Below are positions 2,792-51,851 of a stretch of DNA of 64,000 bases, one piece after another. Origin of the DNA: Convolutriloba macropyga (lineage: Eukaryota); assembly GCF_964194025.1 (NCBI RefSeq), contig NC_134468.1, positions 79,236,001 to 79,300,000 of the forward strand, given 5' to 3'. The notes below the pieces were generated by a model. It made no database searches and had not been told where the DNA came from. It saw only the letters and a program-made list of their open reading frames with translations. How positions within the stretch are numbered: position 1 is the first letter of the stretch; every line of letters begins with the position of its first letter. A program made the position numbers and the translations under genes.

Positions 2792-3591
2792 TTACAAAAT
2801 GCTTTCTCTGTCGTTATCTGTGAAAGCTAAGTAGACATCGCTGTGACGTAACACCGGATCCTGATTCCCTATCGATTCGGGTGGGGAGGGGTACTGATCG
2901 GAGGAGTCCTCACTCGGAATATTAGCCGAACATCCCTGGGCAATATCCATGGACATTTGGTTTTTCCAGGGTGGCTCGTACGACTTAACAGGAGAAGTTA
3001 TACCTCTGACGTCACAATTCCTGCTCGCGCTATCGCCGCGTTTGTGGGCGGAGCTTCCTACTCGGTGTTTTACAGCCCGAACTGTTGTATGTTCCGAGTT
3101 GCTGGTTCGACTCGTCTCGTATCGCCTCGGTGACGTCATACTCGTGTACGCATATTGGTTCATTCGTCGTTCGATGTCGGCCATCCGAGACATCGTACTG
3201 GACGTTGTCGGTTCCTGCCCAGACGAAGTGAAATCAACACCAGTCGGAGAACTGTTTTCATAGTACTCCGGGTACAAACTGGGATCGGGCGGTAGTCGTT
3301 TTTTGCGTTGTACAGAAGTCGTAGAACCCGGAGACGATAGAGGTTGTTCAGTATTATTATTATTGTTATTGTTATTTAAAGTTTGTGCCCTGTTTGAGTT
3401 AAAGTTTGGACTGTTTTGAAGGTTTCTGTAGGAACTCTGGATGGTCCGGTTACTTCCAGAAGATAAACCAGGTGAATGTATAGTGCTATGATGGTCATGA
3501 TAGTGTGGTTGTTGTTTTGTTTGGATCAGGTATTGTTTACCCTTGTGAGTTAAGTCAGCATACTCGTGAGCTTCGTCTGTATTTTGATAGC
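2792..3591 (-). CDS. Terminal coding exon, low-complexity tail ending ...DNDRESIL*; putatively exon 9 of the SLC16-like gene
   Basis: TTTTTCAG acceptor at 3592; phase 1 matches the 7042 donor. 800-nt open frame (G)YQNTDEAHEYADL...poly-Asn...KKRLPPDPSLYPEYYEN...DVYLAFTDNDRESIL*. AATAAA 72 nt downstream. Confidence 0.85.
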
Positions 3592-5730
3592 CTGAAAAAC
3601 AGTCATTAATTTATACTTGCGTCTCAAATTAGGCGAATCCCTGGTTTAGACCTCAACTTATGAAAAGTTCATGCTGGACCGAAAAGTGACGACGAAAGAC
3701 CGTGCTCGACCCAATGATTTGAGCTCGGCGCAAATTATTCACGCTAGACCTTTTGTGTCCGACTACAGCCTGACCCACTTTTCTACGCTGGGCGTTTTTT
3801 CGACCTATAATGTAATGCTGGACTCAAAAATGTAGAAATGAAAAAAAAAATGCTGAACTGTTGTCACATAATAATATCATAAACGATTTTTTCTTCAGTC
3901 TGTTTTTCGTCTCGAAAAATTATACGTGCAATTCTTTTGCAAACTGTTCTTTATAACGTATTCATGCTCTTTCTTTGGTCGCATTTTGCAAGAACCGCTA
4001 TACAGTGAAAATCTGCGATGTTATAAGAAAATGATTTCTTTGTATTTTTAACGGTAAAACATATAGAAAATGCCATACTTTCAACAAGGATAATCGGAAG
4101 ATGACTATTACACTTACGCTAATTATTTCCAATCAATTATGTAATACGTCAATTTTATCCAACTGCAACAACTGATTTATCTCAAGAATTCAATACATTG
4201 TTTCAGAATTTTAGCATTTTTCAGCTGTTTTTAAGTTTTATTCCTCTGTTGCAATGCTGTTTAGCATTGCTTCTATGGTTCTTCAGTATAACAGGAAACA
4301 AAAAAAAACATTTTCCGAATTGCACGGAATCAGACATATGGAAAGATTTTTTGCTCGCGCAATGGAAAAACCAAGGTCCGCTCACAAATTTTGCATAGGT
4401 CCACCGTTAAAGTACTCTTTCTTGGCTGATGTAAAGACTACACTTCAACCAAAAAGCCCATAAAAATCCATGTTCACCAAACCGATCATGAAAAAACTTT
4501 CGCTTGATACAAGGAAAAAATTTAACTAGCCTTTGCGTAGGGAGCCCCATTGTATAATTTAAGTCAAAATAGGCCTCCACTAGAAATTTTAGGTGTTTTT
4601 TAGTTGGGGGTGAAACATGGGATACTGTTCGATATCAATAAACTCGCATTTTTGATTTGCAGTACAAACTTGTAGAAAAATTTGCATTTAAATCAGAAGG
4701 ATAAAAAAAGGAAAATAGCTCGATCAGTTGAATCAATTTCAGTTTTTCAGGCATTTTATCGTCACAATTGTCACCGATTTGTTAGCTTGTCCTAATGTTC
4801 ATCCATTCTTTATTACCTTTGTTTTATTCTCTTAAAACTGTATAATTGTTTTTCCTTTTAAATTCTAAGACAATTTCAGTTAGCAGACAATGTGGAGCTT
4901 AATTATACTGCTATAAAAATTTGGGCAAATTGAGTATCACCATCAGTTCAAGGTTACGCTGGCTTAGATGTTCCAATTGTTTATTTTTAGTTTCAGGTAG
5001 ATTTCAGGTTGAAGTAAAGAATATTATTAACCAGCGTACTGGGTTCAATTCAATCCGCCCTGAATAATATATACGCTCGTTCACCATTTTGATACTCAAC
5101 GGTTATGCGAATAGAATACCAAGTTTTTTTTCATGAAACGTTTTTTGGCTTTTTTAATTTAATACAGAGCAAGATTATGTTGCAAAACATTCACAAAGCT
5201 CAATTTAAAGAATTTAAGATAACCTTCCAGTGTGATGCTTCATAAATGAACTAGGCTTTTGCAGTTGAAAGGAAATCAGCTGATTAGCGCTTCAATAATA
5301 TGAAATCTTTATTTTGATTCATTTCGTTCAAACCAGTAAATTTATTGAAAAAAGTTTCGAAGAAGTTTTGTAAACTGGAGATTAAAAACCTCCGATATAA
5401 GTCATTTCATTGTTTTTTTTCTAGAAGTATCTAAATTGTGTGCGATTATGAGTACAGCCCGCGAAAACAAGAACACTTCACACCTAAAGTTCTTGACAAT
5501 CAAATTGATTGTTATTTAAAAGAACAACAAATTAATAGGCAGTTCCAGTTTTCAACAAACGTTTTCAGTTTGGTTTTTATTTTGAATTGGAATTATTTTT
5601 TTTACTTTGTTCTGATCAACCAGAAACGTGAATAAACCTTTAAAAAATTATCCTAAAACTGTGAATAATTTTTTGAATTCACAATTTTGTCCCAATTCTA
5701 GTGCTTCTCGATTTCATCCGCCTTAGAACC

Positions 5731-5949
5731 TACCCGTAAGAAGAACGAACATCTAGGGGGATGGAGAGCGTGGGTTCAATCCCCGTGCAGAACTTTGTTT
5801 TCGCACTTGGATTAAGACTTGCCAAGTCTTGGCCAGGTCTGACAAGTCTTAAATTTGTTATGATCATAGCTCTGAATCAGTACTGAGAAATATAGACTTG
5901 GAATTAGACTTGCCCAGTACTGATATTGACTTGGCGTTAGGTACGGGTA
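5731..5949. mobile_element. Short derivative of the 13406-14345 MITE family with a tRNA-like B-box
   Basis: 5806-5949 closely matches 14205-14345. Bounded by TACCCGTA...TACGGGTA; contains GGGTTCAATCCC. Confidence 0.65.
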
Positions 5950-7041: not shown

Positions 7042-7363
7042 CCATAGGATTGTCTATCGAGTCATCGGCATCCAAGTCGAAACTCTCGTCATGCTGTCTC
7101 ATTCGTTCGATGTACTTGTCAGTGTTCGGATCTCCACTCACGACGGCAGTGGTCACGTGATGCTCATTCACTTGCTTATTACGCAACATTGCGGCATTTT
7201 CCACAGGCGAGGAGTTGTCGGTTGGAGTCACGAGAGAGATCGTGGATCCGATGCTCTGTTTGATTGATTTGAGAACTGAAGAACCCAGACTGGAGGGTCT
7301 GACAGCCGAAGATTCGTTTTGGTCTGGAAGTCCCAAGTATGTGCCACATTTGGTTGCGTCTTC
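7042..7363 (-). CDS. Internal coding exon, Ser-rich disordered; putatively exon 8 of the SLC16-like gene
   Basis: TTTTCAG|EDATKCGTYLGLPDQNESSAVRPSS...DSIDNPM-G|GTAGGT. GC-rich island in AT-rich DNA; phase 0/1. Confidence 0.8.
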
Positions 7364-8164
7364 CTGAAAAATTGTGATAATTACAACACTTGAAAAGTTG
7401 TGAACCCTAAAAATGCAATTTTTATTCGAAACGGTCCATGAAGAGAACTTGCTGTATCGGAATCGAGAGGAGAAAATTGGGAGAATTTGAACTCATCGTT
7501 GACTTTACCTCTACGTAGATATATTGTTCATAGCCATTGAGAAACTGGACCAAAATACTTGCTAAGAACCCTGAAATTTGATACTGACAGTAATTTTGAT
7601 TTTGACATGAATTGAGACAGCACTTCGATTTAAATCGTTTGAGAAAATATCTTATAATCTGTTGATTCCCTCATATTTCTGGGCAAAAAAATCTAACAAT
7701 AATAAATTGTTTACGGATTACGCATGATACAAACGGGCATTTACATAATTTATTTATTTTCAAATGTTACATGCGCTCCGAAAGGACACCATTGACCCCT
7801 ATGGATCGTTTTCAGGCGCCTTTGTGAGGAAGATAAACAAAAGAGTTTGTTGGGTTTATGCAGGGAAAAGGAATACTATGTGTCTAAAAAAAGTTTCAAA
7901 TAAAACCAAAACACAATTCTTGGATTTAAACGGCAGTATACAACTTACAAATATCGATCGTTCCAATCAGCAAAAATATAGTTTTTTATGTCTAAAGAAC
8001 CAATAACATAGTTTTTAAGGAAACTTGTGGAGAAAGCTTTAACCTGTTTTTCTTTCATTTTTCTCAGGCTTTTGAAAAAAGTAGGATCTAAACCAAGCAA
8101 GCAGTTGCATAGTTTTCTCAACCTTACTGTGATTGAGCAATTACTTAGTTTAGGGTAACTCATT

Positions 8165-10850
8165 TTAAGTTATTTTTTTTGTTTTTCTCATCCCATCAAT
8201 TTCAATCAGCTCTTTTTCTGCGATTGCTTTTTTCAGTTGTTCGACATTGCATTCTTTTCGTATCACTTTTATCAGCAACTTTAGCAGTTCGTAAATATGG
8301 AGTTCTTGTGTGCTGTAGATGTTGTTTTCTTCTCGTATTTTTGTAGTTGACTCAAATTTTTTCTTAAAAAAGATTGTTCTAAGCAATCTGTTTACTTTGT
8401 TATCATTAGGCTGTAGAATGCTTTTTGTCGACGACCCATAAGCTATGACTCCGTACTGTATGATTGGCTGTACATAAGTCTTATAGACTCTTATCATATG
8501 CGATACTTTTAGGAACTTTCTCAGACGATAAAACATAGCAGTGAACTGGTTCAGCTTCTTCTGGATAATATTGCTATGTTCGGAAAAGCTTAAACGGTGA
8601 TCTAGAATGATGCCTAAATACTTGAAACTGTTTACATTTTCTATTTTTTCCGCGTAAAGTGAAAAGCCGTCTTCACTGGCTTTCTTTTGCCTGAAAGACA
8701 TTGTCTTTGTTTTTTTGATATTTAGTGTGAGCCCATTTTGCTCTAGCCAGTGTGTAACATTGTTTAGAGCCAATTGATGCTTGCTATCTATTGTTTTTGG
8801 AGTTCCAATGGTTTTTATAGCGGTATCGTCAGCAAAAAGATAATCTGTACTATTTTCATTGTTTCATGAAATGTCGTTTATATAAAGAATAAACAGCAGT
8901 GGTCCAAGGATGGAACCCTGCGGTACTCCAAACAACACTTGTCTAGATTTTGAAGATTTTCCTTTCACTTTTACTACCTGTGTTCTGTTGTGCAGAAAGG
9001 AAGCTATTATGCTTAAAGTTTTACACCTCAATCCATAATCTTAACATTTCTCTAGGAGAATGTGATGGTCGACAGTATCAAGTGCTTTTTTCAAGTCCAG
9101 AAAAGTAACCTTGATTTCATTTGCGTTATTTTGTTTATTCATTCTGATATCCTCCAACAATGAAACAATTGCGTCGGTAGTGTTGTGGTTTGATCTAAAC
9201 CCAAATTGATTAGCTTTTAGTATCTTGAATTTTTCTATATAGTTTTTAATTCTATCAAAAATTAGGAACTCAAATATTTTGCCAATGATAGGTAACAATG
9301 AGATCGGTCTGTAATTCTCTGGTTTGCTCTTGTCTCCTTCTTTATGGAGTGGTGTTATGGCTGCTATTTTAAAAGGCTTCGGAAAATTTCCCTCCTCAAA
9401 ACATTTGTTGAAGGGCATCGTGAGAACCGGCGAAACACTTGCCGATACAGCTTTGATATAGACGTAATTCAAATTATAGCAATCTGTGCTGTACTTTTTC
9501 TTAGTCTTAGCGATAGCGGCAGTAACTTCTTCTTCATCAATTGTCCTGAAAAACATAGAATTTATTTGTTTTGCTCTCTGTGTCAGTTTTGGTGAAAAAA
9601 TTTTTTTGCTAAGTTAGCTCCTTTTGTAGCAAAAAATTATTGAATTTATTAAGATCATCAACAGCGTTCTTTTCTACTGTTTTTTCATCTCCATTGATAT
9701 TGACTACTTCGTTAACAAACTGAAAAAAATTCCTGTTTCTGTTTCCAGCTTGTCTTTATTTGGTTTTCATAAAAATCTGACATCTTTCCTCTTATTTTTT
9801 TCCTCAACAATTTGGAATGTTTTTTGTACGCTTCTTTATCACTTTGGGATTTTGTTGTTAGGTAACGCTTCCAGAGTTGGCTTTTTTTAGCTGAGCATTT
9901 TTTTACTTCTCTGTCAATCCAATCTTTCTTGGCGCCTTGTTTTGATGGCTTTACAGGTAAAAAAGTATTGAGTGCCTCAACCAGTTTCTCATGTACGATT
10001 TCTGCACACCGGTTGGTATCACTTGTTGATAATTGGCCGCTCACTGATTCGAATTTTTTCTGGAGAAAAGAATTGAGCTCAAGGAGGAGATGATCATTGT
10101 CTAGTTTATTCCAGTTTCTTCTCAGTACTTGAACACTTTCAAAATTTTTCTCTCTTTTTACAAGCTCGAGTCCCACCGTGTAATGGTCGCTGATTTTGGT
10201 TTTTTCAACAAAACTTTTTGGTTTGAAATTTGTGAAAAAAAAATCAATACAAGTTTTTGTCCTAATTGTTTCGCGCGTTGCTGTTTGAGGGTCTACAAGA
10301 GCCAAAGCATTCATTTCCATTTGGTTAATTATTAAGGTCGATTTTGCCAATTTCTTCAAAAAATTAACATTTAGGTCGCCACACACGATATGTAGAGTAC
10401 CGGGTGTCATACTTATTTGATCAATATAGGAAAAAAATTTTTCAAAGGTTTCTGCTTTTTTAGCATTGGGCGGAATGTATATACAAGTCACTAAGTGTGT
10501 TTTATCGGAAAAGTTAATCTCCTCAAACTAATAGCTTGCAGACTGTTTGTATCAACTGATGCAATTGTTTTCTTTGTCGCTTTTTTGTGTACAAAAATGC
10601 CAACACCACCTCCTCTTTTTTTTCTGTTGGATGTTTCTATCTTGAGGTAGTTCTGCAGAGAAAAACAATCGCTTTCAAAGCTATTTTTTAACCAAGTTTC
10701 AGTTAGGCAGATTGCCAATGGCTCAACCTCTGTCTGACTAATAAAAACTTTGAATTCATCAAAATTTTTTGTTAAAGAACGAATGATTTAAAGAAGTATC
10801 CACTCCTTTGCCGTTTTAACTGAGGTGTCCTTGTTTTCTGAAACCTCCAT
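8165..10850 (-). pseudogene. LINE ORF2 (AP endonuclease + reverse transcriptase), frameshifted
   Basis: APE motifs AICLTETWL, CIYIPP, VCGDLNVN, SDHY. RT motifs ENYRPISLLP, NQFGFR, FLDLKKALDTVDH, GVPQGSILGPLLFILYIND, LFADD, FKYLGIILD. Spread over at least five frame segments. Confidence 0.93.
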
Positions 10851-11519
10851 ATGTTCTTTTGTCTGCGTTTTTAGCATTATGCCTGTCTGGTTTTTATCAG
10901 CATCTCATCCTAACAGCGCATGACTGTTAAAAAAACAAAACAAAAAACATAACAAAACAAAAAAAAACAAAAAAGGAACTTTGGAAAACTGCAAGAGAAA
11001 AAATGTGAAACAAAAGTTTTGAACAAAACTACAAATTTTGGATAGTTTTTAGAGTGTTCCTAGTTGCTTTAATATCTCCGCGGAGATCGCAGAGTTTTTC
11101 TTTTTCTGTAGGCTTCAACTCCCCTTCTTCCAACCTGTGCAGGTTGCGGAGATCGCAACTAGGTTGAAAGGCACCAGCGGAGATCACTGGTAGGTTCGTA
11201 GAAACCTAAAAAAAAGTTGCTCTGTCAATATACAGCTAGATTTATCTATTTGTGCTTTGTTCCTACCAAATGTGTTTATCTTCCCGTGAGAAATCAATTT
11301 ATTTTTGAACAGAAAAATAATCGAAAGTTCTTTGAAGTCAATCAAAACCAAAAGGTTGAGATAAGCATTAAGTTTGTCTTAGTTCCTTTACTCTCTACCG
11401 AAGCAGTGGCGTTTGTTATGTGGCGATAGTTTTTCGACGCTGTTGCGTTCAGTTGCTTGTCTTTTTTTGACGGCATCTAAGTTGTCCAACTTCTTGTACT
11501 TAGACAAACTTAGTTTTTT

Positions 11520-12400
11520 CGATTCCATCATGAACCAAAACTGAGACAACACAATTGTTGGTGCTCGTAATCATGTCTCGCTTGTGTGCCTCGTTTCGTA
11601 TTTCCTGTTCACATTCAGGCAGCGACTCGTACATGTATATATTTAGCTTAAATTTTTTTTGTTTCGTAGGCTCCTGCGTTTTTTGTACACATCAATTTTG
11701 TCCTGGTAGAATATGAACTTACAGATAACAGTGGAATTTGTTTTGGCATTGTTACCGGGTAATAGGTGGCAAGCTTTTAACCGATTATAGTCTATTTTCA
11801 TACCAAGAAAATTTTGAAAAAATTTCAAAGTGTCTCGGGTGACGTCTGCACTATTCCTTGCTTCAAATGGGGGATTGGAAATCAGCACACAATCTTTCCT
11901 GGAATACCGTTCCTGACACCGCAGGCGATCGTTCATGTTTTTTTTATTTTCCCGCAGTTTGGCAATTTCTTGCTCTTGTTGTTCGGTTTTTGAGCGCAAA
12001 AAACGAACCTCCTTGGTTAATTCGCTCACCTTTTCGGAATTGCTACTCACGAGACCCTAATCGCAGTTTGAAGATGTTGCTTCCATCTGCACCACAGCCA
12101 CAAATAAGTAAGAAGAAAAAAAACAATTAAATTCTGTAAATTGCAATGATGATGTAATCTAGTTAAGGATGTTGTTCAAATCGATGTTCTTTTTGTAGGC
12201 TTCTGCTAAAAAAAAACGCGTGTTTTTAGAACACAAATGTGAAGGTCAAAGCCGACTGAATTGCGCTTGCTTTTTTGCTTTCTTTGCTTTTGGGAAATCT
12301 GTGCACTTTCGACTAAAAGGCTTGAAACTGAATCTGCTGGTCTGCTTTTCTTGTGTTTTAAATGTTCAGAATCTCAAATGCCAAGCAAGTGTGCTGAATC
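11520..12400 (-). pseudogene. LINE ORF1 (coiled coil + RRM, L1-ORF1p-like)
   Basis: Heptad-rich segment, then QERYSRKDCVLISN..ACHLLP..VICKF; continues after a frameshift as IYMYESLPECEQEIRNEA. Confidence 0.75.
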
Positions 12401-12499
12401 CAATCTTAACTAATAGATTGTCCAGATGCTTAGTCACACCGATTACGTGCAATGATTAGTCAAAATTGTCATTCAATTAGAATTTTTTAATTGAAGGGA

Positions 12500-12660
12500 A
12501 CATTGTTGACAACATTGTTGAATGCTGCCCAATAAATGCTTTACGCTTGGCCCCTGTTCAGCACTTACAATTTTGTGACCTACAATTAATAATAATAATG
12601 TTTGGTTTCTGCGTAATCGCAGCGGCCTATTCTCAGCTGCCCTTTTCTTCTTAATAATAT
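12500..12660. repeat. Dispersed repeat fragment, with an inverted copy at ~31435-31690
   Basis: The reverse complement CAGCTGAGAATAGGCCGCTGCGATTACGCAG matches 31449-31500. Confidence 0.6.
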
Positions 12661-13405
12661 CCCCACATGCAATATTTCGTCAGGGCTTTCACACAAAAGT
12701 TTTCTCACTCTAGTTATTCATGCAGGAATTTGTAGCCCGTCCCATTTTACTTTTGTAAATTAATTACAGTTACACTGTTATTCCTCTGTTACGCTGCTAA
12801 AATCTTAATCCTTCCGAAGCCACGAACTTAAATGCAGTTCACAAGTGCATTTCAGAACACAAGCATAAACAAAGACTGCGATATTTATTCAATTCGAGAG
12901 AAATTTTGCACGAATTTGTATGGCTAGAATGTTTGTCAAGTAGACAGTAGTGTATCCAAATCGCTTACAAAAGATTAAATGTTGTCAAAAATTCGGTCAA
13001 CTTCAAGCGTGCTCATATTATCTCTGTCCTTTCCATGGACCAAGTGGAAAGTTTTACGATATGAAAACTTTAACAAGAACATAACTGTTGTAACTTCATT
13101 TTCTTTTATTTTTCGAAGTAGCGGCCACTAATTTTGACAATGAAAAGCTTTGAAAAAATGATAAACTATTATCTATCCAAAATCTATGCTTAAAAATAAT
13201 CGAAAAAATAAACGCGATATATAGTTTCAGAAACGGTAGTTTTTTTTCAGCTAAAATTTATTGTCTCTTCATTTTATAATTTTTCCCAAAAAACACATTG
13301 GAAATAGTCCGAGAGCTGAAATATAGCCCAGAATTACTTATCTACCACAGAATTGTTGTTAAAACGTTTGGCAGATGAGGAGCTCTTTCTTTTCATTTTT
13401 CTTAG

Positions 13406-14345
13406 TACCCATACCTTACTCCAAGTCTATATCATTACTGGGCAAGTCTTAAAACAAAACTTACAAGTCTGGGCCAAGACTTGGGTAACACTTGCAAGTT
13501 GATTCCCAAGTCAAAATCAACTTTTCAAAAAATTTTGAGTGAAAATTCGAATTCCAAAAAAATTTCGCAACGTGCTACAATTTTTGCATTAATTTTTGGC
13601 CACGTTCCCTAGGTGTTATAAAATGATGCCGGAGGCACACCAAATTGTATATTAGCACCCCGGGGAAGAGGGGTCTATTCAACGCAAATTGAGGGTATTT
13701 CAGTTGTTCTGGGCCGTTTTCAGTCATTTTTCAGCCGTTCCAGCCACTAAAAAAGCCGAAATCACCAAATGTTTGTACTTTTCAGATAAGCCAAATGACG
13801 AACGTTTCCAAACAAGGAAAAATTGTTAAAAAGGGGTGCAATTGTGAGAGTCCCCATGATGAAGTTTCTTTGGCCATTTTTAGGCGTTTTCGCGGCTAAT
13901 TTTAACGTTTTTTTGCTCTGTTTGACGTTTTTCGGCTATTTTTGACGTTGTTTCGGCTTTTTTTGCCGTTCATTTCGGCGATTTTTGACGTTTTTTCGGC
14001 TTTTTTTGACGTTTTAGGACTTTTTTCGCCTTCCAAGACTCGGATTTAGACGTGTCAAATCTTGGCCAAGACTTGAATTTTGAAGTGCCAAGTCTTGGCC
14101 AAGACTTGAATTAAGTTTTGCCAAGTCTTGGCCAAGACTTGGATTAAGACTTGCCAAGTCTTGGCCAAGACTTGGATTAAGACTTGCTAAGTCCTGGCTA
14201 AGTCTTGGATTAAGACTTGCTAAGTCTTGGCGAAGTCTGACAAGTCTTAAATGTGTTATGATCATAGCTCTGAATCAGTACTGATACCTAGAATTGGAAT
14301 TAGACTTGCTCAGTACTTATATTGACTTGGCGTTCGGTACGGGTA
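13406..14345. mobile_element. MITE with ~43-bp imperfect TIRs (TA-CCC...GGG-TA) and internal minisatellites
   Basis: TACCCATACCTTACTCCAAGTCTATATCATTACTGGGCAAGTC versus the reverse complement of 14305-14345. Confidence 0.7.
14030..14250. repeat. 33-bp minisatellite built of 11-bp CCAAG(A/T)CTTG subunits, partly palindromic
   Basis: About six copies of CCAAGACTTGGATTAAGACTTGCCAAGTCTTGG, preceded by ~19-bp TTTTTGACGTTTTTTCGGC repeats (13900-14015). Confidence 0.9.
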
Positions 14346-14476
14346 TGTTTTTGTTAGCTATCTCTCTGGTACTGGATTAGGTGCACTGGCAAAAACTTGT
14401 GGGCCAAACTTGAATTTCTCTATTGATCTTTCTTTCAGCACTAGATGAAACGCTCTCCAGAAAATTTGCAATTCAA

Positions 14477-14636
14477 TGGTGAGTAGAATAACACTCAATT
14501 TTTCAGACACTGATTATATACACTGATTTAAGGAGAATAACACTGATTCTGGTGAGTAGAATAACACTCAATTTTTCAGACACTGATTATATACACTGAT
14601 TTCAGACACTGATTTAAATAATCAGACACTGATTTC
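14477..14636. repeat. Direct repeat (72-bp period) with CAGACACTGATT subrepeats
   Basis: TGGTGAGTAGAATAACACTCAATTTTTCAGACACTGATTATATACACTGATTT occurs twice, with further ACACTGATT units. Confidence 0.85.
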
Positions 14637-15633
14637 TTAAATTCCAGAACTTAACTTTTCACAAATTTTCATTTCGATTAAAGAAAATTTGCTTTCTCAT
14701 TATTGCAAGTTTAGGTTTAACTTGTATACAGTAGTGAATAATGCAAAATTTTTTCACTAGAAGTTTCGTCGTGACGTCACATGTCCGCATTCGACCTGTT
14801 AAATTACCAGAAATTAAAATTTAACTGGACATTGACGTTATTCGTCCTATGTTTACTGTGCTTTGATCTTTCCAAGCTAATTCATTTCATTAACATTTCT
14901 AAGGTCAACTTTGTTGGTAAATATCAGATATAAACATTCTCAGTTTGGCTATAAGTTGGTGATGTAAACTAATAACTCAAGCTTATAAATGAAATTTGTA
15001 TGACATAAGTTAGACTTGACCAGAATCCATTTTGCTCTTATTAATGCATTTAAATCCCGAGAGAGTATTATTGTGTTATTGGGTAATATTTTACCCCTCT
15101 TTCATCTCCCACTCAAAAGGTAACTTTCATCTTTGGCCTTGTTTGGGGAGGCCCGGGGGTGCAAGATATCCTCAAAAAGGTCGCTTTTCCATTGTTTTCT
15201 GCATCAAAAATGCCTTTCAGTCAAAATAAACACAATAACTTTTTGCCTCAAATTCCTGTAGTAACCTGAGGCGCCCTTATACGCTTACGCATCTATAAGA
15301 CCATAAACAACGTTCCCCCTTTACTTTTCCTGAGATATGATTGACCTTTAACAAACGCTTTTCTCATAACCCTCCCTTGAAAAAAAATGATTTGGCGTAA
15401 ATTTGTCTCTTTTTTCCTCGTCGGTAAACGCCGTTAAAATCCATAGCGCCTCCTTGCAAATTTTCTATATAAAGACGATAAATTTTTGATATAAGTAAGT
15501 TTGACTCTCTTTTCTCGTTTGTAAAAACCGTTGACATCCATTTATCATCTTTATACGACAAATTTACGATAAGTTCTTTATGCATTGTGTTTGTAATATA
15601 GATTTGAAGCTTTCGTTTCCTCATAAAACAAAA

Positions 15634-18170
15634 CAAGGCGGCTCAGCAATGTGCGATGGCACATAAGGTTCCGAGCCCTCCCATCCACAATTTTGGCATA
15701 ATTGTCTACCAAATAAGGAACAGATAGAGAACCCAAAAATTATTTTTTGGGAATACCAAAAAACCCAAAAAAGCCCAAGTATTTTTTGAAAAAAAAATTG
15801 TGTATGAACGATAAGATAGCCTCCAAAGCAAATAGCTCAGTGGAGTAAAAATTGAAGTATTAAATTGCTGTGATATGCCAATATTAAGAAAGTGAGTCAA
15901 GACGAACAACAAAATCAAACAATAACAACAACAACAACAACAACAAACATTAGTTACATCAAAAAGTTTTTGTCCGTTTTAAAAAACAAAATTTAATACC
16001 AAAGTCAACATACCGTCAGATGAATCTAAAACTAAACAAAATAAGCTATAAATCACCAGAAAAGATATGGACCGGTTAACAAAAAGGTTTGGTAACAATT
16101 AGACCATAAAGAACAAAAACAGTAAAGTTAAAAAAATTCGCTTATTTTTTTTTTTAAAACAATTAACTTCAAAGTAATTAAAACCATTAGAAATCAAGTA
16201 AAATATCCCAAAAGTTTACGATTACTAATGCTTCTATAGAAGGGCATTAGGACCTGTCCGTATTCATTTCTTTAAGCGGCTAAAAGAACAACAAAAAAAC
16301 ACCAAACAAAAATTCAATTGAAACTTGACAGAAAACCCTGTCAAAACCGTCAAGCCATATTTCAGTCCTCAGAATATATTCGTTTGCGCCTTCTTCAAAC
16401 ACTGATAAGGTAGTATTTGGCCATTTATTAGTAAGACTAGGTAACAAGTAGACAAAAATGAGAAAAGGGCAAAAGTATGTAATAATTTTGATTTTTTTTT
16501 CGAAACAAAATTATATCCAAAGTCATGAAAAACATTAATTACAAAATGAAATATTTAAATAGGGCGGTTTATCCGTCTAAAGGAATTGTTTGAGACCTGC
16601 AATCATCCAGAATAATTCTTGCGCCTACAAAAAGGACGTCAAACATGAAAAAATTCAAATTAATTTTTCTTTTTTTTTGTAAAAAACCGGTGTCGAAGTC
16701 AGTAAAGTCGTAACGCATTTTTTTTAAAAAAATAGATTTTGCGACATGAATTCCTTTTGACACCTTCCCTTGACATCCATAATGAAATATTCGACCTGTA
16801 ATTAACGAGATTAGGTACCAAAAAGAGAAATAAAAAGAACAAACTTGCGAAGTTAAAAAGTTTTTATATTTAATTTTGGAAAACGATTGTTTTCAAAGTC
16901 ATGAAAGCCATCAGCTATCTAAAAACGATAATCTATATTTTTAAGGATTTTAATATGTTCAATGGTGTTTCATTTTGAACTCTAATAATGTGATATGAGA
17001 ACTGACAATAATGTGATAATGTGACTAGAAAACGTGAAAAATTGGCAAATTTCTAAAAACAAAAAAAACTGAAATCTAGTAGTATCAAAGCCAGAAAACA
17101 ATAACTTCAGCCTTAAAAATGCAATCGAGACTAAATCTCAGACCAGTAGAATGAAGAAGCATTCTTTTTTTGCTGACACTAAGCTGCAAGTTGACCAAAT
17201 TAAGAAAAAAAATGGAGGAAAAGTTCATTAAGCCATTATTTATTTAAAAATCAATTATTTTTAAAAGTCGAAACGGTCATAAACTTTCACGTAAAAAGCC
17301 AAATGCAATAGTTTTAAGCTGCTTAGGAAGCCAATTGGACCTATCACTCCTGAGCTTTCATTTGATATGTTCTGTTCTTTATTATTAAAAAAGTTCTTTT
17401 TTCAAAAGAAGACAGACTGATTGCAATCCGAATTCTTTTTGGATTGCAACAGCCCAAGATTGGACCAGAACTATTTCTGCTAATGCCTATTGTCCGTTAG
17501 GAACTATTGATTTTCCGAATGTTGTTGATATAGATAATTTGTTAGTTGAAAAACTCAAAAAAAAAATTCTGCATTTTTGATAATAAACGAGTAAAGCTAG
17601 CAAAAAACGGCAAAGTTTTAATTACAGAGCTCTCTCCGCGAACTTTGAAGTGGGAATAGCCCCCTCTGGGTCTACAAAGATTTTTTTAGTGTTGTTCGGG
17701 GGTGTAGTCCCGGCAAATTTTATCAAAGTGGACTAAAGTAGCTTATTTCGTGCTGTTTGTGATGAAAAAGGCTGAAATTTGAAATATTTATCCAGATTTT
17801 TTGACAAAAAAACAAATCAGAATAATCACCAGTGCTTGTTTGTCCTTAAAAATAAACTCAACGACACTATTCTGCTAAAATTTCAACAAATTTTAGCATA
17901 ATTGACGAAAAATTAGTCAAAAATTTCGGAAAATGTGAATAAAACAAGGTGAGTTCACTCTACTTTTCTCAGAAGTTGAAACCTCGATAACTCACTGTAG
18001 AAATTAAAAATTAAAAAAATCTTTTTAATTCCATACTCTACGCTGGACGAGCTTTTTAATGATACCAGTCTCAACTCTCTACGATGAATATATCGATCGG
18101 CGAAAATTGACTGAACAAAAAAAACCCATTTGAGTATATAGTTCCTCTCCCCTCAAGAGGGGTCGGAACA
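15634..18170 (-). mobile_element. Helentron-associated non-autonomous element (HINE/DINE-1-like), copy 1
   Basis: Reverse complement is collinear with 40323-42903 at both ends and internally (e.g. 17150-17240 vs 41270-41350). SubTIRs GTTCCGAGCCC (15668) / GGGGTCGGAAC (18159); terminal ATGTGC..GCACAT hairpin. Confidence 0.72.
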
Positions 18171-18499
18171 AAAAGGTTTTAGAAACGGACTAAGTAAACT
18201 GCAAAAGGTCATTTTTTGTATTTGTAATGCATGATCTCTCAAAAAAGCGTATGCACATATTTCTGACGTTTTATATTTGGCGATATGTTTAAAGAAATTT
18301 TTTCGCGTTTTTTCATTGATAAGGATTTTCTGAGCTGGCGATAAAACACATTATATCTTTATTGGCGTTGTATTGCTTTAGCAAGGTAAATGTTTTCATT
18401 GAACAAGACTTATTGTCAAAGTAAAATTTAAACGAGATCTGTAGAAACGATTTTAATATGGGGTATGATTTCGTAGGAGGCTATAATGAGAGACAGCCC

Positions 18500-19050
18500 C
18501 AACCTGGACTTGCACAAGTCGCAGAGCATTTCAGCGCTGAATCAGCACAGTTTTAAAAGTAAAAACTTTATTCGGTTCTGAAACCTTACATAAACAGAAT
18601 ATTTCACGTTTCTTTATATGCAGTTTTTCTTCATTATGATTATATTGAGGTCAGAGAATTCGCCCAGTCTAAGATTATCTTGTATAGTCTGAAAGTTACC
18701 CAAAATTAAGACTGGACAGAATAATTTCATATTTTTAAGCTTATAACTGGTAATATTATAGTAGCTTACACAATCAGCACGGAGCCCATTTAGCTTAGTC
18801 GTTACGAAATATTACATAAATTAAATGTTACAAGTACCAACGCGGGCCTTCCAGTGGCTTATGAAGCAGAGCTTCTTGGCGGGAGTTAAGCTAAACATAT
18901 TATTTTTCATGCAGTAAATTTTACTAAAATACCAAGACTGGCCAGTATAAATTGTGATATGAACAGAGTTCTGGCCATCTTAAAAAAAAAACAAAAATTC
19001 TCTAGTCTGATTGAGCGCTGATTTGCTCTGCCACCAAATTCGGTGAAATA
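18500..19050. mobile_element. ~560-bp MITE (CAGAGCATTTCAGCGCTGA TIR family), copy 1
   Basis: Collinear with 33538-34103 and 35480-36046. Ends GCAGAGCATTTCAGCGCTGAATCAG / CTGATTGAGCGCTGATTTGCTCTGC. Confidence 0.72.
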
Positions 19051-19215
19051 CGAAAAAGAGAGAGACCCGAAAACAAAAGAAACAACTCAAAAAAAAGAAA
19101 GACAACATGAACTGATTGCAGGCTTTTTTTCGAATTGACAAAATTATTTTCATAATCAGCTGATTAAAAGTTCAAAAGTCAAATATAATTTTTAGATTAC
19201 AGTAATATTTTCCAG

Positions 19216-19457
19216 TACAAATATTTCAAATCAAAATAAGAACTTCCGTGTTCTGCTAAACATTCTTAACTGTTGGTTTTGTTTAGTTTGGGCGAGAGAA
19301 TGTACGCGGTCTCCCATTGGCCTCATGCAAATGTCCAAAGGAATCGACATCACAGAGCTGGACTTAGACGACTCAAAAGGAACAACCTCTGGATTCAAAA
19401 AGTCTCTCTTTGACTTCACTTGCAATGTTGAACATAACTACTCCTGGACATGGGCAG
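19216..19457 (+). CDS. MACPF/perivitellin-2 67-kDa-like gene, first visible coding exon; not in the ORF track on this strand
   Basis: Frame ..NFRVLLNILNCWFCLVWA-RECTRSPIGLMQMSKGIDITELDLDD..GFKKSLFDFTC.. has a signal-peptide-like segment and resembles the PV2-67 N-terminus (C..P.G...GVDITKLDL..GF....D.TC). Donor CAG|GTTTAT. No in-frame ATG, so the start is uncertain (acceptor 19215 or 19286). Confidence 0.8.
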
Positions 19458-19681
19458 GTTTATAACGCTTGGGCTGTTTCATTCATTCATATATTGCTAT
19501 TTCAGGGAAAAATAATGCTCTCTTTGGAAAACTTCTTATCCATAAAACGGACCGTATATGGAAAGTTAGTTAGATTACCATAGCAAGATCATAAAACGGA
19601 AAATTAAATAACTTTTACGGACCATATGTGGTCCATTTCATGGTAAGTAAGTTTGGTCAACCCGGGTTACTACTTCTTTGT

Positions 19682-20041
19682 NNNNNNNNNNNNNNNNNNN
19701 NNNNNNNNNNNNNNNNNNNNNNNNNNNNNNNNNNNNNNNNNNNNNNNNNNNNNNNNNNNNNNNNNNNNNNNNNNNNNNNNNNNNNNNNNNNNNNNNNNNN
19801 NNNNNNNNNNNNNNNNNNNNNNNNNNNNNNNNNNNNNNNNNNNNNNNNNNNNNNNNNNNNNNNNNNNNNNNNNNNNNNNNNNNNNNNNNNNNNNNNNNNN
19901 NNNNNNNNNNNNNNNNNNNNNNNNNNNNNNNNNNNNNNNNNNNNNNNNNNNNNNNNNNNNNNNNNNNNNNNNNNNNNNNNNNNNNNNNNNNNNNNNNNNN
20001 NNNNNNNNNNNNNNNNNNNNNNNNNNNNNNNNNNNNNNNNN
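19682..20041. other. Assembly gap (N run); others at 55354-55632 and 57055-57196
   Basis: N characters in the sequence. Confidence 1.
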
Positions 20042-20145
20042 GCACGCCCTGCAACACTAAGTGAGGACCTACAAAGGGAAAGAGAGGGTTCTTCTCAAAA
20101 CCAAAATACCTTGCGGATTTTTTGCTTCATTGTTGGACTTTTTAG

Positions 20146-20481
20146 TTCCCGAGCAGCTGTCTATTATCGACAAAACGCCCAAAAACAACTTTCAAGTTAC
20201 AACTCAAGTGTTGCGATCTTTCCACGATTTCAAGAAACGAATGGCGAGGCGAAGTGGGCTAATTCTAACCGAAGGCATGTTCTCCAGGAATTCTCAATAT
20301 CGGGCAGTGAGTCGAGAACTGATTGAATACTCGACTGTAATCACAGAAATTCGGGCAATTTTTAACACTGTAGATGTCGAATTGAACACGTCGTCTCTTC
20401 TGGGTGACCACGTGCAAAAACGACTTTCAATTTTGCCCGACAACTTACACGATAATCCGGAAGCATATCAAGACTTCATAG
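20146..20481 (+). CDS. MACPF gene exon 2
   Basis: TTTTTAG|(V)PEQLSIIDK...GMFSRNSQYRAVSRELIE...RLSILPDNLHDNPEAYQDFI; phase 1/1. The required donor reads AG|GGATGT (non-canonical). Confidence 0.8.
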
Positions 20482-21380
20482 GGATGTTTGTTTCCTTTTT
20501 AACCCTCACTAATTATTTTCGGCTTTTCTCAGGTTTTTTTGTTTTAATTTTCATGGGTTCAATATGTTTAAATATAAAAAATTGGATAAATGACTCGAAA
20601 TTTTCGGGTTAGGGTTTATTATATTAGAGGACAGATCTGTTCCGTTTGCCCCCCCCCTAGCATTTTATTTGCACCAAACCCCCCCCCCCAGACGCACAGG
20701 TCATAATATTTTTGCATAATGATTTACTGTAATGGTAAATGTGCTCTGTAACTAGAGTTACTCTGTATAACATATATGGGGAAAAGATCCTAGAGGACTA
20801 TTAGAATTCGTCATAACTTAATGCAGTCATCACTTCGGCAATTGCAACCAGACAATAACAGAGACCATAGCAAGCAAGTTAGTCAAACATGGCTCTTGGG
20901 TTAGAAAATTTTGGGTTAGAAAAGCCCAAAATTTAGGCAAAAATATCTTAAAAACCTTCATTGCCTTCAATTCTCTGGCAGCGTTGCTTTCCTGAAGTTA
21001 CACTAGTTTAAACTTAATTAATACATCTGAGCGCCTGGATATTAAGGCAGGAGAACTAAGTGACTAGGAGAATAATTTAAATCGCGTTTTTCACTCGAAG
21101 AGATGTTCTTGATTGATTAATAAGGTATATTTACTTCAATTTAATTATGTCAAATTTTTTCATTAACTCAAATTAATATAATTTCACTTGAGTAATTTCA
21201 TGTAATTTTCACCTGGGTGGTTTGTGAACCCGAGTTTGTTTACATTAACCCAGTATAGGTTAATCATTTACCTTCACTTTTTGAAATTATAACCATTATC
21301 TGTTGAAGTATAAAAACCACCAAAACATTTTAACTGAGGTCGCGAGAAGGAAATATTAATCCCTTTTGGAATGTTATTAG

Positions 21381-21629
21381 ACACTTTTGGAACACATTTC
21401 ATCTATAAGGCGACATTTGGTCAATTTCTGCAGAACAGATTTTTAGTCTCAAAGGATTTTCACCTCTCGTCATCTGATGACGAACTCCTTCAACTGAGCG
21501 TGAAGAGTTTCATGAACAAATACTGGAGGGTGGCACGACCAAGAACGAGCAGAGGTGAAATTAAACCACCATTGGACGTTGATGAAAGTTTTTTGTCTGC
21601 AACTCGAATTCAAGAAGCAACAAATTCAG
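21381..21629 (+). CDS. MACPF gene exon 3 (MACPF signature)
   Basis: TTATTAG|(D)TFGTHFIYKATFGQ is a variant of [YW]G[TS]H[FY]x6GG. Donor CAG|GTAATG; phase 1/1. Confidence 0.88.
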
Positions 21630-22897: not shown

Positions 22898-22922
22898 AAT
22901 TTTTCGTAACTATTCCTAGTTT

Positions 22923-36573: not shown

Positions 36574-36713
36574 CTGTGGTTTCCAGAAGATATTCCGAAT
36601 AGAGTGACGAATAGGATTGTGGAGAAGAGAGACTGGTTGGGGAGGATTAAAAAAGACACTGCCACAGTTGAGAGAAAGAGAGAAAGCTGGATAACTGTAC
36701 GCAGTTGCAGAAG
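36574..36713 (-). CDS. SLC16-like transporter exon 5 (TM9-TM10); not in the ORF track
   Basis: TTTTCAG|LLQLRTVIQLSLFLSTVAVSFLILPNQSLFSTILFVTLFGISSGNH(R)|GTCAGT. Phase 0/2. Confidence 0.85.
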
Positions 36714-37404: not shown

Positions 37405-37536
37405 CTGTTTGGCGGTGTCGAACTCTGCGTAGGCTGCAGCTAAAGCACATCCGAAAGAGAAGAAGGTGCCGAAGATGACGAGCATTATGACAGAGTTACT
37501 GGACGACAGGCTGTCTGCGCTCACACACACGTCTAT
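37405..37536 (-). CDS. SLC16-like transporter exon 4 (TM8); not in the ORF track
   Basis: TTTTAG|IDVCVSADSLSSSNSVIMLVIFGTFFSFGCALAAAYAEFDTAKQ|GTATGC. 132 nt, phase 0/0, hydrophobic helix at the expected position. Confidence 0.82.
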
Positions 37537-45416: not shown

Positions 45417-45666
45417 AAGTAAACTGATTGGGATGTAGAAGCCAAGTGATGAGAAGAAAGTGACCAGAAGCCACAACTGGAACGCCTTTATGCCCATTGG
45501 GTTCACGGGAGGCACAGTGTCCAGCAGTTTGGCACTCACTCTGGGTCCCTGTGGCTTCAGTCTGCCGGGGTAGTACATCTCTACAGGGCGGAAGGCGCAT
45601 GCCAGGGGTATTAAAAGGAGTGACAAGAGGCTGGGTACTAAGAGGGCCAGGAACCAGCCAGAGTAC
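45417..45666 (-). CDS. SLC16-like transporter exon 3 (TM6, short loop, TM7)
   Basis: Acceptor TTCTTAAG, phase 2: (R)YSGWFLALLVPSLLSLLLIPLACAFRP...KAFQLWLLVTFFSSLGFYIPISLL. Donor |GTTAGT, phase 0. Confidence 0.9.
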
Positions 45667-47890: not shown

Positions 47891-48002
47891 TAAAATTTGA
47901 AAACGGTGAAACAATTTTTTAGATCTTATTAATTCTTTTTTTAATATTACATAGGTGAAGAAAAAGCAGAAAACTAATCTTTAAAAAAGGACTAAATCGA
48001 AC

Positions 48003-48366
48003 CTTGCACATTCGAAGAGTAGCGGGGCCAATAAAGCAGATCCAAATCCAGCACCACTATGTACAATCGCAATCACTCGGATCCGTTTCTTCGAGAAATA
48101 CTGACACAGAATAATAAATGACGTCACCAAACACATAGAAGAGGCCACTCCGAACAGCAGCCCATAACATAAGACAAAAAGAAGCGTGGAAGTTGTAAAA
48201 CTGCAGAGGAGTAATGATGCGAATGTTGATAGAGAGGAGAATAGAGCGACCTTTCTGGGACCGAATTTGAAGGTCAAACAGAGGATAACTGGAGATAAGA
48301 GGTGGCATAGACCGAAGGAGAAAGAGCCTGACCATGCTAAAACGGGCGAGAAGAGATGAGAGGAAT
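48003..48366 (-). CDS. SLC16-like transporter exon 2 (TM2-TM5)
   Basis: Acceptor TTTAG, phase 1: DSSHLFSPVLAWSGSFSFGLCHLLSPV..KFGPRKV..YGLLFGVASS..QYFSKKRIRVIAIVHSGAGFGSALLAPL, carrying SLC16 motifs AWxGS and YFxKxR. Donor AG|GTTCGA, phase 2. An in-frame alternative acceptor at 48336 is possible. Confidence 0.92.
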
Positions 48367-50586: not shown

Positions 50587-51640
50587 TGGAATTATTATCT
50601 TTTTATAAGGCAACAACCCAAAAAAAATAGATGCTGGTTTATATTTTCATTTTGGTGATTGCTGTCTGATTTTTTTAAGCAAAAAATTAAAAAAGGGACA
50701 AAAAACTGCGCTCTTTTATTAAACTAAGAATATTATCATATTACCTAACTAATTATAATGATACCGTTAGAAATGATACGTGATGGAGTGGAAATAAGGT
50801 GAAATTCAGTTTTTTTTAAGTTTGTTTCCGTAATTAAGATAATAGAGTGCAATGCGAAAGTCGTCAAAGTCAAATTGTTTGGCTTTCCCTTTTTTTCTGT
50901 ATAAATCTTCTTTTTTTATTTGATCAAACTTGCCTATTTTAAGGATTTGACATTCCGGCTTTGCCATTCTCTATCATTACTCCAACGTTAACACCGTAAC
51001 TACTGGGTGTAAGCGTATTGTTAATTGCAATGGGAAAAGGTTTTACAAACGTTTAAAAATTTTGCTGAAATTTTAGACCCTATTGTTTAAATGGACAGCA
51101 TCCCTAGTTTCAAACCTGACATACAGAAAATTTATTTTATCTGAAAAACAAACAAACCAAATTTTTCGACATTTGGAAACCAAACATAACGTTCATTTTT
51201 GACGTTTGAAAGCCAAATTTTTCGACGGCGATTTACTTTTGAACAGACCAACAACTTGATACGTTCTAAAGTGGAAATTTCCGTTGATTTGAAAACCATC
51301 AATAGTAAAGATGCCAAAGGAAAAACGTAAGGACTCTTGTCATTTTTGTCAAAGTAAAACAAACAGTCCTACGAATTTCTTAACGTTTACAAGTGACAAT
51401 TTCTCGACTATAGAAGATAGTATTCTATCACGGGAAAAGGAAACAATTGCGTGATTTTAAAAAATTCATTAGATTTTTTTAAAAGATTGATCTATTAAGT
51501 CGTAAATATGAGTAAATTTGCGGAGACAGAAATTATTTCGATCATTTAAAGGTTTCAAGTCAGGATTTTCTCATCTAAGATGATTTCAAAAAATGAAATG
51601 AAATCTGAAAATGATCGGAAAGACAGAAAAACAACTTTAC

Positions 51641-51851
51641 CTGTTAAGTTGCGGTCAGCGTAATTGACTATTTGAAACACGTAAAACGTCACTCCGAAGC
51701 TAAGATGAAGCCCGAGTGTTATAACTTGAGTAATAAACACAGATATTACAACAATCCAACCCCAGCCACCCTCTGGGTAATATTTGAGCCCGCTGGACGA
51801 TCGGGTTCCGGGCAAATTTGGAACTGGAGCTGTTGTCGCTGCGTTTGCCAT
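51641..51851 (-). CDS. SLC16/MCT-family MFS transporter, coding exon 1 (N-terminus + TM1)
   Basis: ATG at 51851 gives MANAATTAP...YYPEGGWGWIVVISVFITQVITLG, the P[D/E]GGWGW motif typical of SLC16. Ends at donor ACAG|GTAAAG (phase 1). Upstream acceptor TTTTCAG at 52023. Confidence 0.92.

What the first reader, a model, noticed from the sequence alone, without database searches (positions are those of the whole stretch)
2792..51851. SLC16-like transporter apparently fused to a ~460-aa signalling-type tail (candidate transceptor)
Seen: seven exons build a complete 12-TM SLC16 fold. Exon 7 has a CAG|GTTAGA phase-0 donor at 28469, after which the frame becomes AT-rich and stops within 12 codons. 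The exons at 7042-7363 and 2792-3591 are on the same strand, start in phase 0, and I found no upstream coding exon or ATG for them. Joining gives 2694 nt = 897 aa with no stop. Known: SLC16 C-termini are usually short, and their size variation normally lies in the TM6-7 loop, which is very short here. Inference: an MFS core plus a long disordered scaffold suggests a sensor or adaptor role, analogous to the long-tailed yeast glucose sensors Snf3/Rgt2.
Basis: partly seen in the sequence, partly recalled or inferred. Interest (0 to 1): 0.8.

Follow-up and report, generated by a model that had tools for sequence, protein, structure and literature searches.

The report
Acoel SLC16 transporter with long tail
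The nine exons form one real gene of the acoel worm Convolutriloba macropyga: a divergent monocarboxylate-transporter-type (SLC16) membrane protein with a 456-residue disordered cytoplasmic tail, already in RefSeq as an unnamed protein and conserved in a related acoel; a sensor role for it is untested.

Summary
Nine minus-strand exons reproduce it, including the 28470->7363 junction.

The N run at 19682-20041 lies inside the 21.1-kb intron 7 and touches no exon. Another assembly's contig of the same species carries exon 7 and exon 9 on one strand, spaced within 12 nt of the window. An antisense nested gene with exons on both sides of the N run is collinear in an ungapped Symsagittifera roscoffensis contig.

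S. roscoffensis has an 860/871-aa ortholog (62-67% identity) with the same core plus tail, the same splice positions and phases, and a canonical GTAAGT donor at the critical junction.

The core folds confidently as a 12-helix SLC16 protein; its best structural matches are MCT8, MCT1, MCT2 and MCT10. It carries Cys where the family's substrate-binding TM8 arginine sits.

The tail is predicted disordered and matches only acoel proteins. It diverges no faster than the core and keeps short motifs across three species, ending in ...DNDRESIL.

The Snf3/Rgt2-like sensor idea is neither supported nor excluded. This is a lineage-specific variant of a known transporter family, of moderate interest.

The parts
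51641..51851 (-). Coding exon 1: ATG, N-terminus, PEGGWGW motif and TM1
   Evidence: The exact exon table reproduces XP_075250804.1. The N-terminus is conserved in S. roscoffensis.
48003..48366 (-). Exon 2 (TM2-TM5). An alternative acceptor at 48336 gives isoform X2, 10 aa shorter.
   Evidence: It hits MFS_1 and MCT10/MCT8. The same X1/X2 pair is annotated in S. roscoffensis.
45417..45666 (-). Exon 3: TM6, the short TM6-7 loop and TM7
37405..37536 (-). Exon 4: TM8, including Cys305 at the position of the family arginine
36574..36713 (-). Exon 5: TM9-TM10
29824..29939 (-). Exon 6: TM10-TM11
28470..28828 (-). Exon 7: TM12 and the first ~85 residues of the tail. Donor CAG|gttaga, phase 0.
   Evidence: Conservation with S. 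roscoffensis ends exactly at the donor, which there is AAT|gtaagt.
7364..28469 (-). Intron 7, 21.1 kb. It holds the N run 19682-20041, a decayed LINE and an antisense nested gene.
   Evidence: The counterpart in S. roscoffensis is 7.9 kb and also holds the antisense gene.
7042..7363 (-). Exon 8 (tail, 107 codons plus 1 nt): phase-0 acceptor, phase-1 donor
   Evidence: The S. roscoffensis homolog has the same acceptor context and start, tttcag|GAAGA.
2792..3591 (-). Exon 9 (tail, 265 codons plus stop), with conserved motifs and the C-terminal ...DNDRESIL. An AATAAA lies about 70 nt downstream.
   Evidence: The same phase-1 acceptor is seen in a third species.

Best explanation
This is one protein-coding gene, C. 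macropyga LOC142343004, on the minus strand with nine coding exons.

What it encodes: a divergent SLC16/monocarboxylate-transporter-family MFS protein. Its twelfth helix is followed by a ~456-residue cytoplasmic tail that is hydrophilic and predicted to be intrinsically disordered.

Shown:
- The exon structure, and its identity to the RefSeq model.
- Physical continuity across the intronic N run.
- Conservation of the whole architecture, splice positions and phases in S. roscoffensis.
- A confident 12-helix SLC16 fold.
- A tail with no relative outside acoels whose amino-acid divergence (dN ~0.32) equals that of core exons, while third codon positions are saturated.

Inferred:
- The tail is a platform of short linear motifs. 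These are YQTI and HxY[AT]D[LI] (YxxPhi type), KRLPPDP (class I SH3-ligand type), YEPPWKNQxSM, an acidic serine cluster, and a C-terminal -ESIL (class I PDZ-ligand type).
- These motifs would control sorting, endocytosis and anchoring of the transporter to a submembrane scaffold.
- Because Cys replaces the TM8 arginine that binds the carboxylate in MCT1, MCT8 and MCT10, the substrate or coupling probably differs from classical monocarboxylate transport. An arginine conserved in both acoels in TM10 (R365) may substitute for it.
For: - An exhaustive phmmer search with exon 9 returned an 887-aa protein at 100% identity, with the tail at residues 623-887. It and the 897-aa form are RefSeq isoforms X2 and X1. 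X1 carries four XP accessions.
- The exact exon table was reconstructed. Three of the gene's eight donors are of the GTTAG type, so the exon-7 donor is typical for this gene.
- The S. roscoffensis ortholog XP_063721508.1 is 860 aa, 62% identical and covers 100% of the query.
- One ungapped 47.9-kb S. roscoffensis contig carries exons 7, 8 and 9 on one strand. The donor is AAT|GTAAGT and the acceptor tttcag|GAAGAT.
- tblastx of intron 7 between the two species finds only the antisense gene. It finds no conserved sense-strand coding block that could be an alternative first exon.
- Continuity across the N run is supported.
- Fold: the AF2 core, residues 29-441, has pLDDT mostly 80-94 and the tail about 30. 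The top 16 Foldseek PDB hits are MCT8, MCT1, MCT2 and MCT10 with TM 0.81-0.87. phmmer gives MCT10 at 4e-19. TIGR00892 is the best NCBIfam hit.
- dN and third-position identity were computed per exon.
- Motifs are invariant across three species.
- Cys305 aligns to the arginine in both the HMMER and MAFFT alignments. The role of that arginine is taken from bioRxiv 10.1101/2024.10.17.618737.
Against: - No transcript was seen directly. RefSeq models are predictions, and I could not inspect their RNA-seq support. No transcriptome-derived protein spanning the junction is in the searched collections.
- In C. macropyga an AATAAA pair lies 30-45 nt past the exon-7 donor, so a short isoform ending there is possible. 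However, AATAAA occurs 1.7 times per kb on this strand and is absent at the S. roscoffensis site.
- The motif assignments are consensus matches read from the sequence, not tests of binding.
- In the third species only the last exon was found. Its linkage to an SLC16 core is unknown.
Confidence: 0.8

Rival explanations
1. Chimeric gene model. The SLC16 gene ends at the TAA 12 codons past 28469 and uses the nearby AATAAA. Exons 8-9 belong to a separate downstream gene whose short or non-coding first exon lies somewhere in 7.4-19 kb. The arrangement would be tail gene (-), MACPF-like gene (+), SLC16 gene (-).
For: - A stop and AATAAA follow shortly after exon 7.
- A complete gene on the other strand and a LINE lie between core and tail.
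- Gene predictors do fuse neighbouring genes.
Against: - Exon 8 starts at a strong acceptor in phase 0, with no in-frame ATG upstream in C. macropyga.
- About 60 residues before the first Met of exon 8 are conserved in S. roscoffensis.
- Conservation of exon 7 ends exactly at the donor, and the read-through peptides are unrelated in the two species.
- Donor and acceptor positions and phases are conserved. The S. roscoffensis donor is canonical GTAAGT, and no AATAAA follows it.
- No conserved sense-strand block exists in intron 7.
- The two RefSeq annotations agree.
Confidence: 0.07
2. Transceptor. The SLC16 core binds a metabolite but transports little or none of it. It signals occupancy through the long tail to cytoplasmic partners, as Snf3/Rgt2 do in yeast.
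For: - A long conserved cytoplasmic tail sits on an MFS core.
- The family's substrate-coordinating TM8 arginine is replaced by Cys in both acoels.
- Tail motifs are of protein-docking types.
Against: - The tail has no homology to Snf3/Rgt2 tails or to any signalling domain.
- The motifs present (YxxPhi, PDZ and SH3 ligands) are typical trafficking and anchoring signals of working transporters and channels.
- A beetle SLC16-like protein also has Cys at this position, so the loss of the arginine is not tied to the acoel tail.
- The rest of the core is well conserved and folds as a normal transporter.
Confidence: 0.1
3. Two products from one gene. The long 887/897-aa form coexists with a short ~535-aa form made by intron-7 retention or polyadenylation at the AATAAA just past exon 7. 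The tail would then be an optional regulatory module.
For: - The stop comes after 12 codons, and two overlapping AATAAA lie within ~45 nt of the donor.
- GTTAGA is not the strongest donor, and the intron is 21 kb long.
Against: - No such isoform appears among the RefSeq products.
- The AATAAA is not conserved in S. roscoffensis.
- AATAAA is common in this AT-rich DNA, at 1.7 per kb.
Confidence: 0.15

Closest known systems
Human MCT10 (SLC16A10) and MCT8 (SLC16A2), PDB 9GSZ, 9HHQ, 9FKN, 8ZKN
   Same: - 12-helix MFS core.
- Best sequence matches (4e-19 and 5e-16, covering residues 25-446) and best fold matches (TM 0.81-0.87).
- GGWGW motif before TM1.
- No counterpart of MCT1 Lys38.
   Different: - About 20-25% identity.
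- Cys305 replaces the substrate arginine (MCT8 R371/R445).
- Ser replaces MCT8 D424/D498.
- The TM6-7 loop is short.
- A 456-aa C-terminal tail stands where the human proteins have a few tens of residues.
Symsagittifera roscoffensis XP_063721508.1 / XP_063721505.1, 'monocarboxylate transporter 8-like'
   Same: - Ortholog with 62-67% identity over the full length.
- Same core plus tail.
- Same exon 7/8/9 junctions and phases.
- Same alternative exon-2 acceptor.
- Same antisense gene inside intron 7.
   Different: - Intron 7 is 7.9 kb instead of 21.1 kb.
- The donor is the canonical GTAAGT.
- There are several indels in the poorly conserved parts of the tail.
Yeast glucose sensors Snf3 and Rgt2
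   Same: An MFS core carrying a long cytoplasmic C-terminal tail. This is an analogy of architecture only.
   Different: - A different MFS family: sugar porter rather than SLC16.
- No sequence relation between the tails.
- Loss of transport and signalling are shown for the yeast proteins (established knowledge). Neither was tested here.
Carabus blaptoides CBL_09749 (656 aa) and arthropod SLC16-like clusters of 600-1100 aa
   Same: - Nearest non-acoel homolog found: 27% identity over 96% of the core.
- Short TM6-7 loop.
- Cys at the TM8 arginine position.
- A C-terminal extension of ~190 aa.
   Different: - Its tail is unrelated to the acoel tail.
- Other invertebrate SLC16 proteins that were aligned keep the arginine and carry their extra length in the TM6-7 loop.

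Membership tests
SLC16 / monocarboxylate transporter family (TC 2.A.1.13) | 12-helix MFS fold closest to solved SLC16 structures | tested here: met
   The AF2 core has pLDDT 80-94 with 12 long helices. The top 16 Foldseek PDB hits are all MCT8, MCT1, MCT2 and MCT10.
SLC16 / monocarboxylate transporter family (TC 2.A.1.13) | Signature [D/E]G[G/S][W/F][G/A]W before TM1 (motif recalled from the SLC16 literature) | tested here: met
   PEGGWGW at residues 26-32. It is invariant in the six-sequence alignment.
SLC16 / monocarboxylate transporter family (TC 2.A.1.13) | Signature YFxK[RK][RL]xLAx[GA]xAxAG before TM5 (motif recalled from the literature) | tested here: inconclusive
   The sequence YFSKKRIRVIAIVHSGAGFG begins at residue 160. 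The YFxKKR and GxG parts are kept and the middle differs.
SLC16 / monocarboxylate transporter family (TC 2.A.1.13) | TM8 arginine that coordinates the substrate carboxylate (MCT1 R313, MCT8 R371/R445). The cited preprint calls it highly conserved across human MCTs and 'likely a defining residue'. | tested here: not met
   Cys305 aligns to the arginine in the HMMER alignments to MCT10 and MCT8, with high posterior probability. It does so too in the MAFFT alignment, where three invertebrate SLC16 proteins keep GR.
SLC16 / monocarboxylate transporter family (TC 2.A.1.13) | Score above the curated cut-off of NCBIfam TIGR00892 | tested here: not met
   It is the best NCBIfam hit, but at 57.5 bits against a cut-off of 586.1. 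This marks a divergent member, not an equivalog.
Nutrient transceptors of the Snf3/Rgt2 type | Long cytoplasmic tail attached to an MFS core | tested here: met
   There are 456 residues after TM12, with no hydrophobic segment and pLDDT about 30.
Nutrient transceptors of the Snf3/Rgt2 type | Homology of core (sugar porter) or tail to Snf3/Rgt2 | tested here: not met
   The core is SLC16, not sugar porter. The tail matches only acoel proteins among 1.84 billion representatives.
Nutrient transceptors of the Snf3/Rgt2 type | Ligand binding without net transport, and ligand-dependent signalling through the tail | not testable with these tools
   This needs expression, flux assays and interaction assays.

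The most novel reading that the evidence does not exclude
The acoel protein is a metabolite sensor derived from an SLC16 transporter. It has lost the family's substrate arginine and reports occupancy through an acoel-specific 456-residue docking tail. Both species where the full protein is known, Convolutriloba and Symsagittifera, host photosynthetic algae, so the sensed metabolite could come from the symbionts. This would be the first SLC16 transceptor.
Probability: 0.08. Interest if true: 0.75.

Novelty: new variant of a known kind. Interest (0 to 1): 0.35.

Why it matters
SLC16 transporters are normally compact proteins, and their regulation comes from partner proteins such as basigin or embigin. 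A member with a long tail that matches only acoel proteins, keeps its motifs and ends in a PDZ-type ligand, and that also lacks the family's substrate arginine, would be a natural experiment. It shows how a transporter can acquire its own scaffold or trafficking module, and possibly a new substrate.

The practical value now is modest. The gene model is already public. What this work adds is:
- evidence that the fusion is real and conserved;
- evidence that the N run is harmless;
- a concrete list of motifs and residues to test.

Tried and rejected
- Pfam on single exons: only exon 2 hits MFS_1, and the tail exons hit nothing.
- ESM Atlas on the tail: the best score was 0.80 with low recognition, so it is uninformative.
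- C-terminal half of the core alone against the PDB: no hit. The full-length alignment was used instead.
- Third species (L001, ERZ26859043):
  - Neither tblastn nor a two-sequence HMM finds an exon-8 homolog or any core exon in the 10 kb upstream of its exon-9 homolog.
  - I could not walk further up that contig. Its called genes read through stop codons and may not be passed by reference.
  - Whether its tail is linked to an SLC16 core stays open.
- Tail of the beetle homolog against the acoel tail: no similarity.
- dN/dS: not computable because synonymous sites are saturated. Only dN and third-position identity are reported.
- Literature: there is no paper on monocarboxylate transporters in Symsagittifera, and none whose title or abstract is about an SLC16 transceptor.
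- The letters under the N run were not read in any copy. Only coordinates were compared.
Full report
**Source and gene model**

The window is AT-rich animal DNA. An exhaustive phmmer search with the 265-residue translation of the last exon (window 2795-3589, minus strand) against 1.84 billion representative proteins gave two hits. One is an 887-aa protein, 100% identical, with the tail at its residues 623-887. The other is a 241-aa ORF at 36% identity.

The first hit is RefSeq XP_075250837.1, "uncharacterized protein LOC142343004 isoform X2" of the acoel Convolutriloba macropyga. Its cluster also holds the 897-aa isoform X1, which carries four XP accessions. The gene lies on chromosome OZ077299.1 of assembly GCA_964194025.3.

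A search constrained to GT/GC-AG boundaries reproduces the 897-aa protein exactly from nine minus-strand exons: 51851-51641, 48366-48003, 45666-45417, 37536-37405, 36713-36574, 29939-29824, 28828-28470, 7363-7042 and 3591-2792. This is 2694 nt including the stop. Isoform X2 uses an acceptor 30 nt further in, at 48336.

**The junction**

- Exon 7 ends ...CAG|gttagact. The read-through frame gives VRLSFIWLAEIK and a stop, followed by two overlapping AATAAA.
- GTTAG-type donors also end exons 3 and 6 of this gene, so the exon-7 donor is typical here.
- Exon 8 starts behind atcacaatttttcag in phase 0. The open frame upstream of it holds no ATG. It ends ATGG|gtaggt in phase 1.
- Exon 9 starts behind gtttttcag.

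**The N run**

The run at 19682-20041 lies inside intron 7 (7364-28469) and touches no exon, so the reading frame does not depend on it. I tested continuity without reading any letters, in two ways.

- The exon-7 ORF and the last 54 codons of exon 9 are both called on one ENA contig from another assembly of the same species (ERZ25071359:ctg35110_46x_l, 177 kb). They lie on the same strand, 25,627 nt apart against 25,639 nt in the window.
- tblastx shows an antisense (window plus-strand) gene with exon matches at 19259-19384 and 20178-20489, either side of the N run. These map collinearly onto an ungapped S. roscoffensis contig.

The ENA contig may derive from the same reads, so it comes from another assembly but may not be independent data.

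**Orthologs**

Searching with the whole 897-aa protein found XP_063721508.1 of Symsagittifera roscoffensis, "monocarboxylate transporter 8-like isoform X2". It is 860 aa, 62% identical and covers 100% of the query. There is also an 871-aa X1 form.

The alignment is collinear through core and tail. One 47.9-kb S. roscoffensis contig without N carries exons 4-7, then exon 8 about 7.9 kb downstream, then exon 9 about 3.1 kb further on, all on one strand.

- The exon-7 donor there is AAT|gtaagt, at the aligned position and in the same phase.
- The read-through peptide (VSLNLFDP*) is unrelated to the one in C. macropyga, and no AATAAA follows.
- Exon 8 begins tttcag|GAAGAT, also in phase 0, and ends in phase 1.
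- Protein conservation therefore stops and restarts exactly at the proposed splice sites. It includes about 60 residues of exon 8 that precede its first methionine.
- tblastx between the two versions of intron 7 finds only the antisense gene, with no conserved sense-strand block that could be another first exon.

The 241-aa hit comes from a third, more distant sample (ERZ26859043). It has the same phase-1 acceptor (ctttag|AC) and the same C-terminus. No exon 8 or core exon was found within 10 kb upstream, and the contig could not be followed further.

**The core**

- Hydropathy and AlphaFold2 give twelve long helices between residues 29 and 441, with pLDDT mostly 80-94.
- The 16 best Foldseek matches in the PDB are MCT8, MCT1, MCT2 and MCT10, with TM 0.81-0.87 by target.
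- phmmer gives MCT10 at 4e-19 and MCT8 at 5e-16 over residues 25-446.
- TIGR00892 "monocarboxylate transporter" is the best NCBIfam hit, but far below its cut-off.
- The GGWGW motif is present.
- The TM6-7 loop is only about 35 residues. Mite, nematode and nemertean SLC16 proteins carry 250-300 extra residues there and have short C-termini.

One feature is unexpected. The TM8 arginine that holds the substrate carboxylate is MCT1 R313 and MCT8 R371 (R445 in the long isoform). It is described as highly conserved across human MCTs and "likely a defining residue" (bioRxiv 10.1101/2024.10.17.618737). Here it is Cys305, and it is also Cys in S. roscoffensis and in the nearest non-acoel homolog, a beetle protein. 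The residue aligned to MCT8 D424/D498 is Ser. An arginine three residues further along TM10 (R365) is conserved in both acoels. That it might substitute for the TM8 arginine is my inference only.

**The tail**

Residues 442-897 are rich in S, T, N, D, P and Q, with net charge -14 and no hydrophobic segment. AF2 gives pLDDT about 30, with three short helices. Pfam finds nothing in the tail. It has no relative outside acoels in the exhaustive search and is unrelated to the beetle tail.

It is nevertheless under constraint. Between the two acoels, third codon positions are saturated (33-42% identical), while dN is 0.32 for exons 8 and 9. Core exons 7 and 5 give 0.25 and 0.29.

Conserved blocks are listed below. 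All are invariant or nearly so in three species, except YQTI, for which only two species could be compared:
- YQTI;
- HxY[AT]D[LI];
- Q[RK]KK[RK]LPPDPxL[YF]PEYY;
- YEPPWKNQ[LM]SM;
- an acidic serine cluster;
- SD[VI]YLAF[ST]DNDRESIL at the C-terminus.

By consensus these read as YxxPhi sorting signals, a class I SH3 ligand ([RK]xxPxxP) and a class I PDZ ligand ([ST]-x-Phi-COOH). These are readings of the sequence, not tests of binding.

**Interpretation**

The fusion is real with high probability (about 0.9). The most economical function is a transporter whose localisation, turnover or clustering is set by its own disordered docking tail, and whose substrate chemistry departs from classical monocarboxylate transport.

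The Snf3/Rgt2-like sensor reading is not excluded. However, it rests only on architecture and on the missing arginine, which a beetle homolog with an unrelated tail also lacks. A short isoform ending just past exon 7 is possible but has no conserved signal.

Direct transcript evidence was not available to me. Public poly(A) RNA-seq exists (PMC13650328) and would decide the matter.

**Verdict**

This is a lineage-specific variant of a known family, of moderate interest.

Noticed in passing
window 19259-25932, plus strand (inside intron 7 of the SLC16 gene): There is a conserved nested antisense gene. Its exon blocks are collinear with the minus strand of the S. roscoffensis intron 7. RefSeq splits the region into two models, of 237 aa (15044-20612) and 409 aa (21371-25932). 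The cross-species collinearity suggests a single gene. The exon at 21338-21688 has only a faint MACPF match around GTHF (E 0.029, below cut-off). The large last exon has no Pfam or PDB hit.
   Followed up: partly
window 8168-12056, minus strand: A decayed non-LTR retrotransposon lies in intron 7. It is frame-shifted and has endonuclease (Exo_endo_phos_2) and RVT_1 pieces. It accounts for about 3.9 kb of the intron's extra length relative to S. roscoffensis.
   Followed up: partly
window 32726-34000 and 34668-35900: A near-identical (99-100%) tandem duplication with a period of about 1,942 nt lies inside intron 5. It could be a recent duplication or an assembly artefact.
   Followed up: partly
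window 48336 / 48366: Alternative acceptors of exon 2 add or remove 10 residues in the TM1-TM2 loop (isoforms X1 and X2). S. roscoffensis is annotated with the equivalent pair, 871 and 860 aa.
   Followed up: partly
window 13860-14238: There are tandem arrays with periods of 21/43 nt and 33 nt in intron 7. The 33-nt array creates a spurious open frame with the repeat QDLASLNPSLG.
   Followed up: no
L001, L004 (ENA contigs): The gene calls on the ENA contigs read through in-frame stop codons. On L004 the codon read through is TGA, and on L001 the stops were seen only as '*' in the translation. The calls are mechanical ORFs from a caller using a non-standard code, not evidence for genes.
   Followed up: no
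window 55354-55632 and 57055-57196: Three more N runs of irregular length (145, 133 and 142 nt) lie upstream of the gene. Their irregular lengths, and the close agreement in spacing across the 360-N run, suggest masking rather than scaffold gaps.
   Followed up: no
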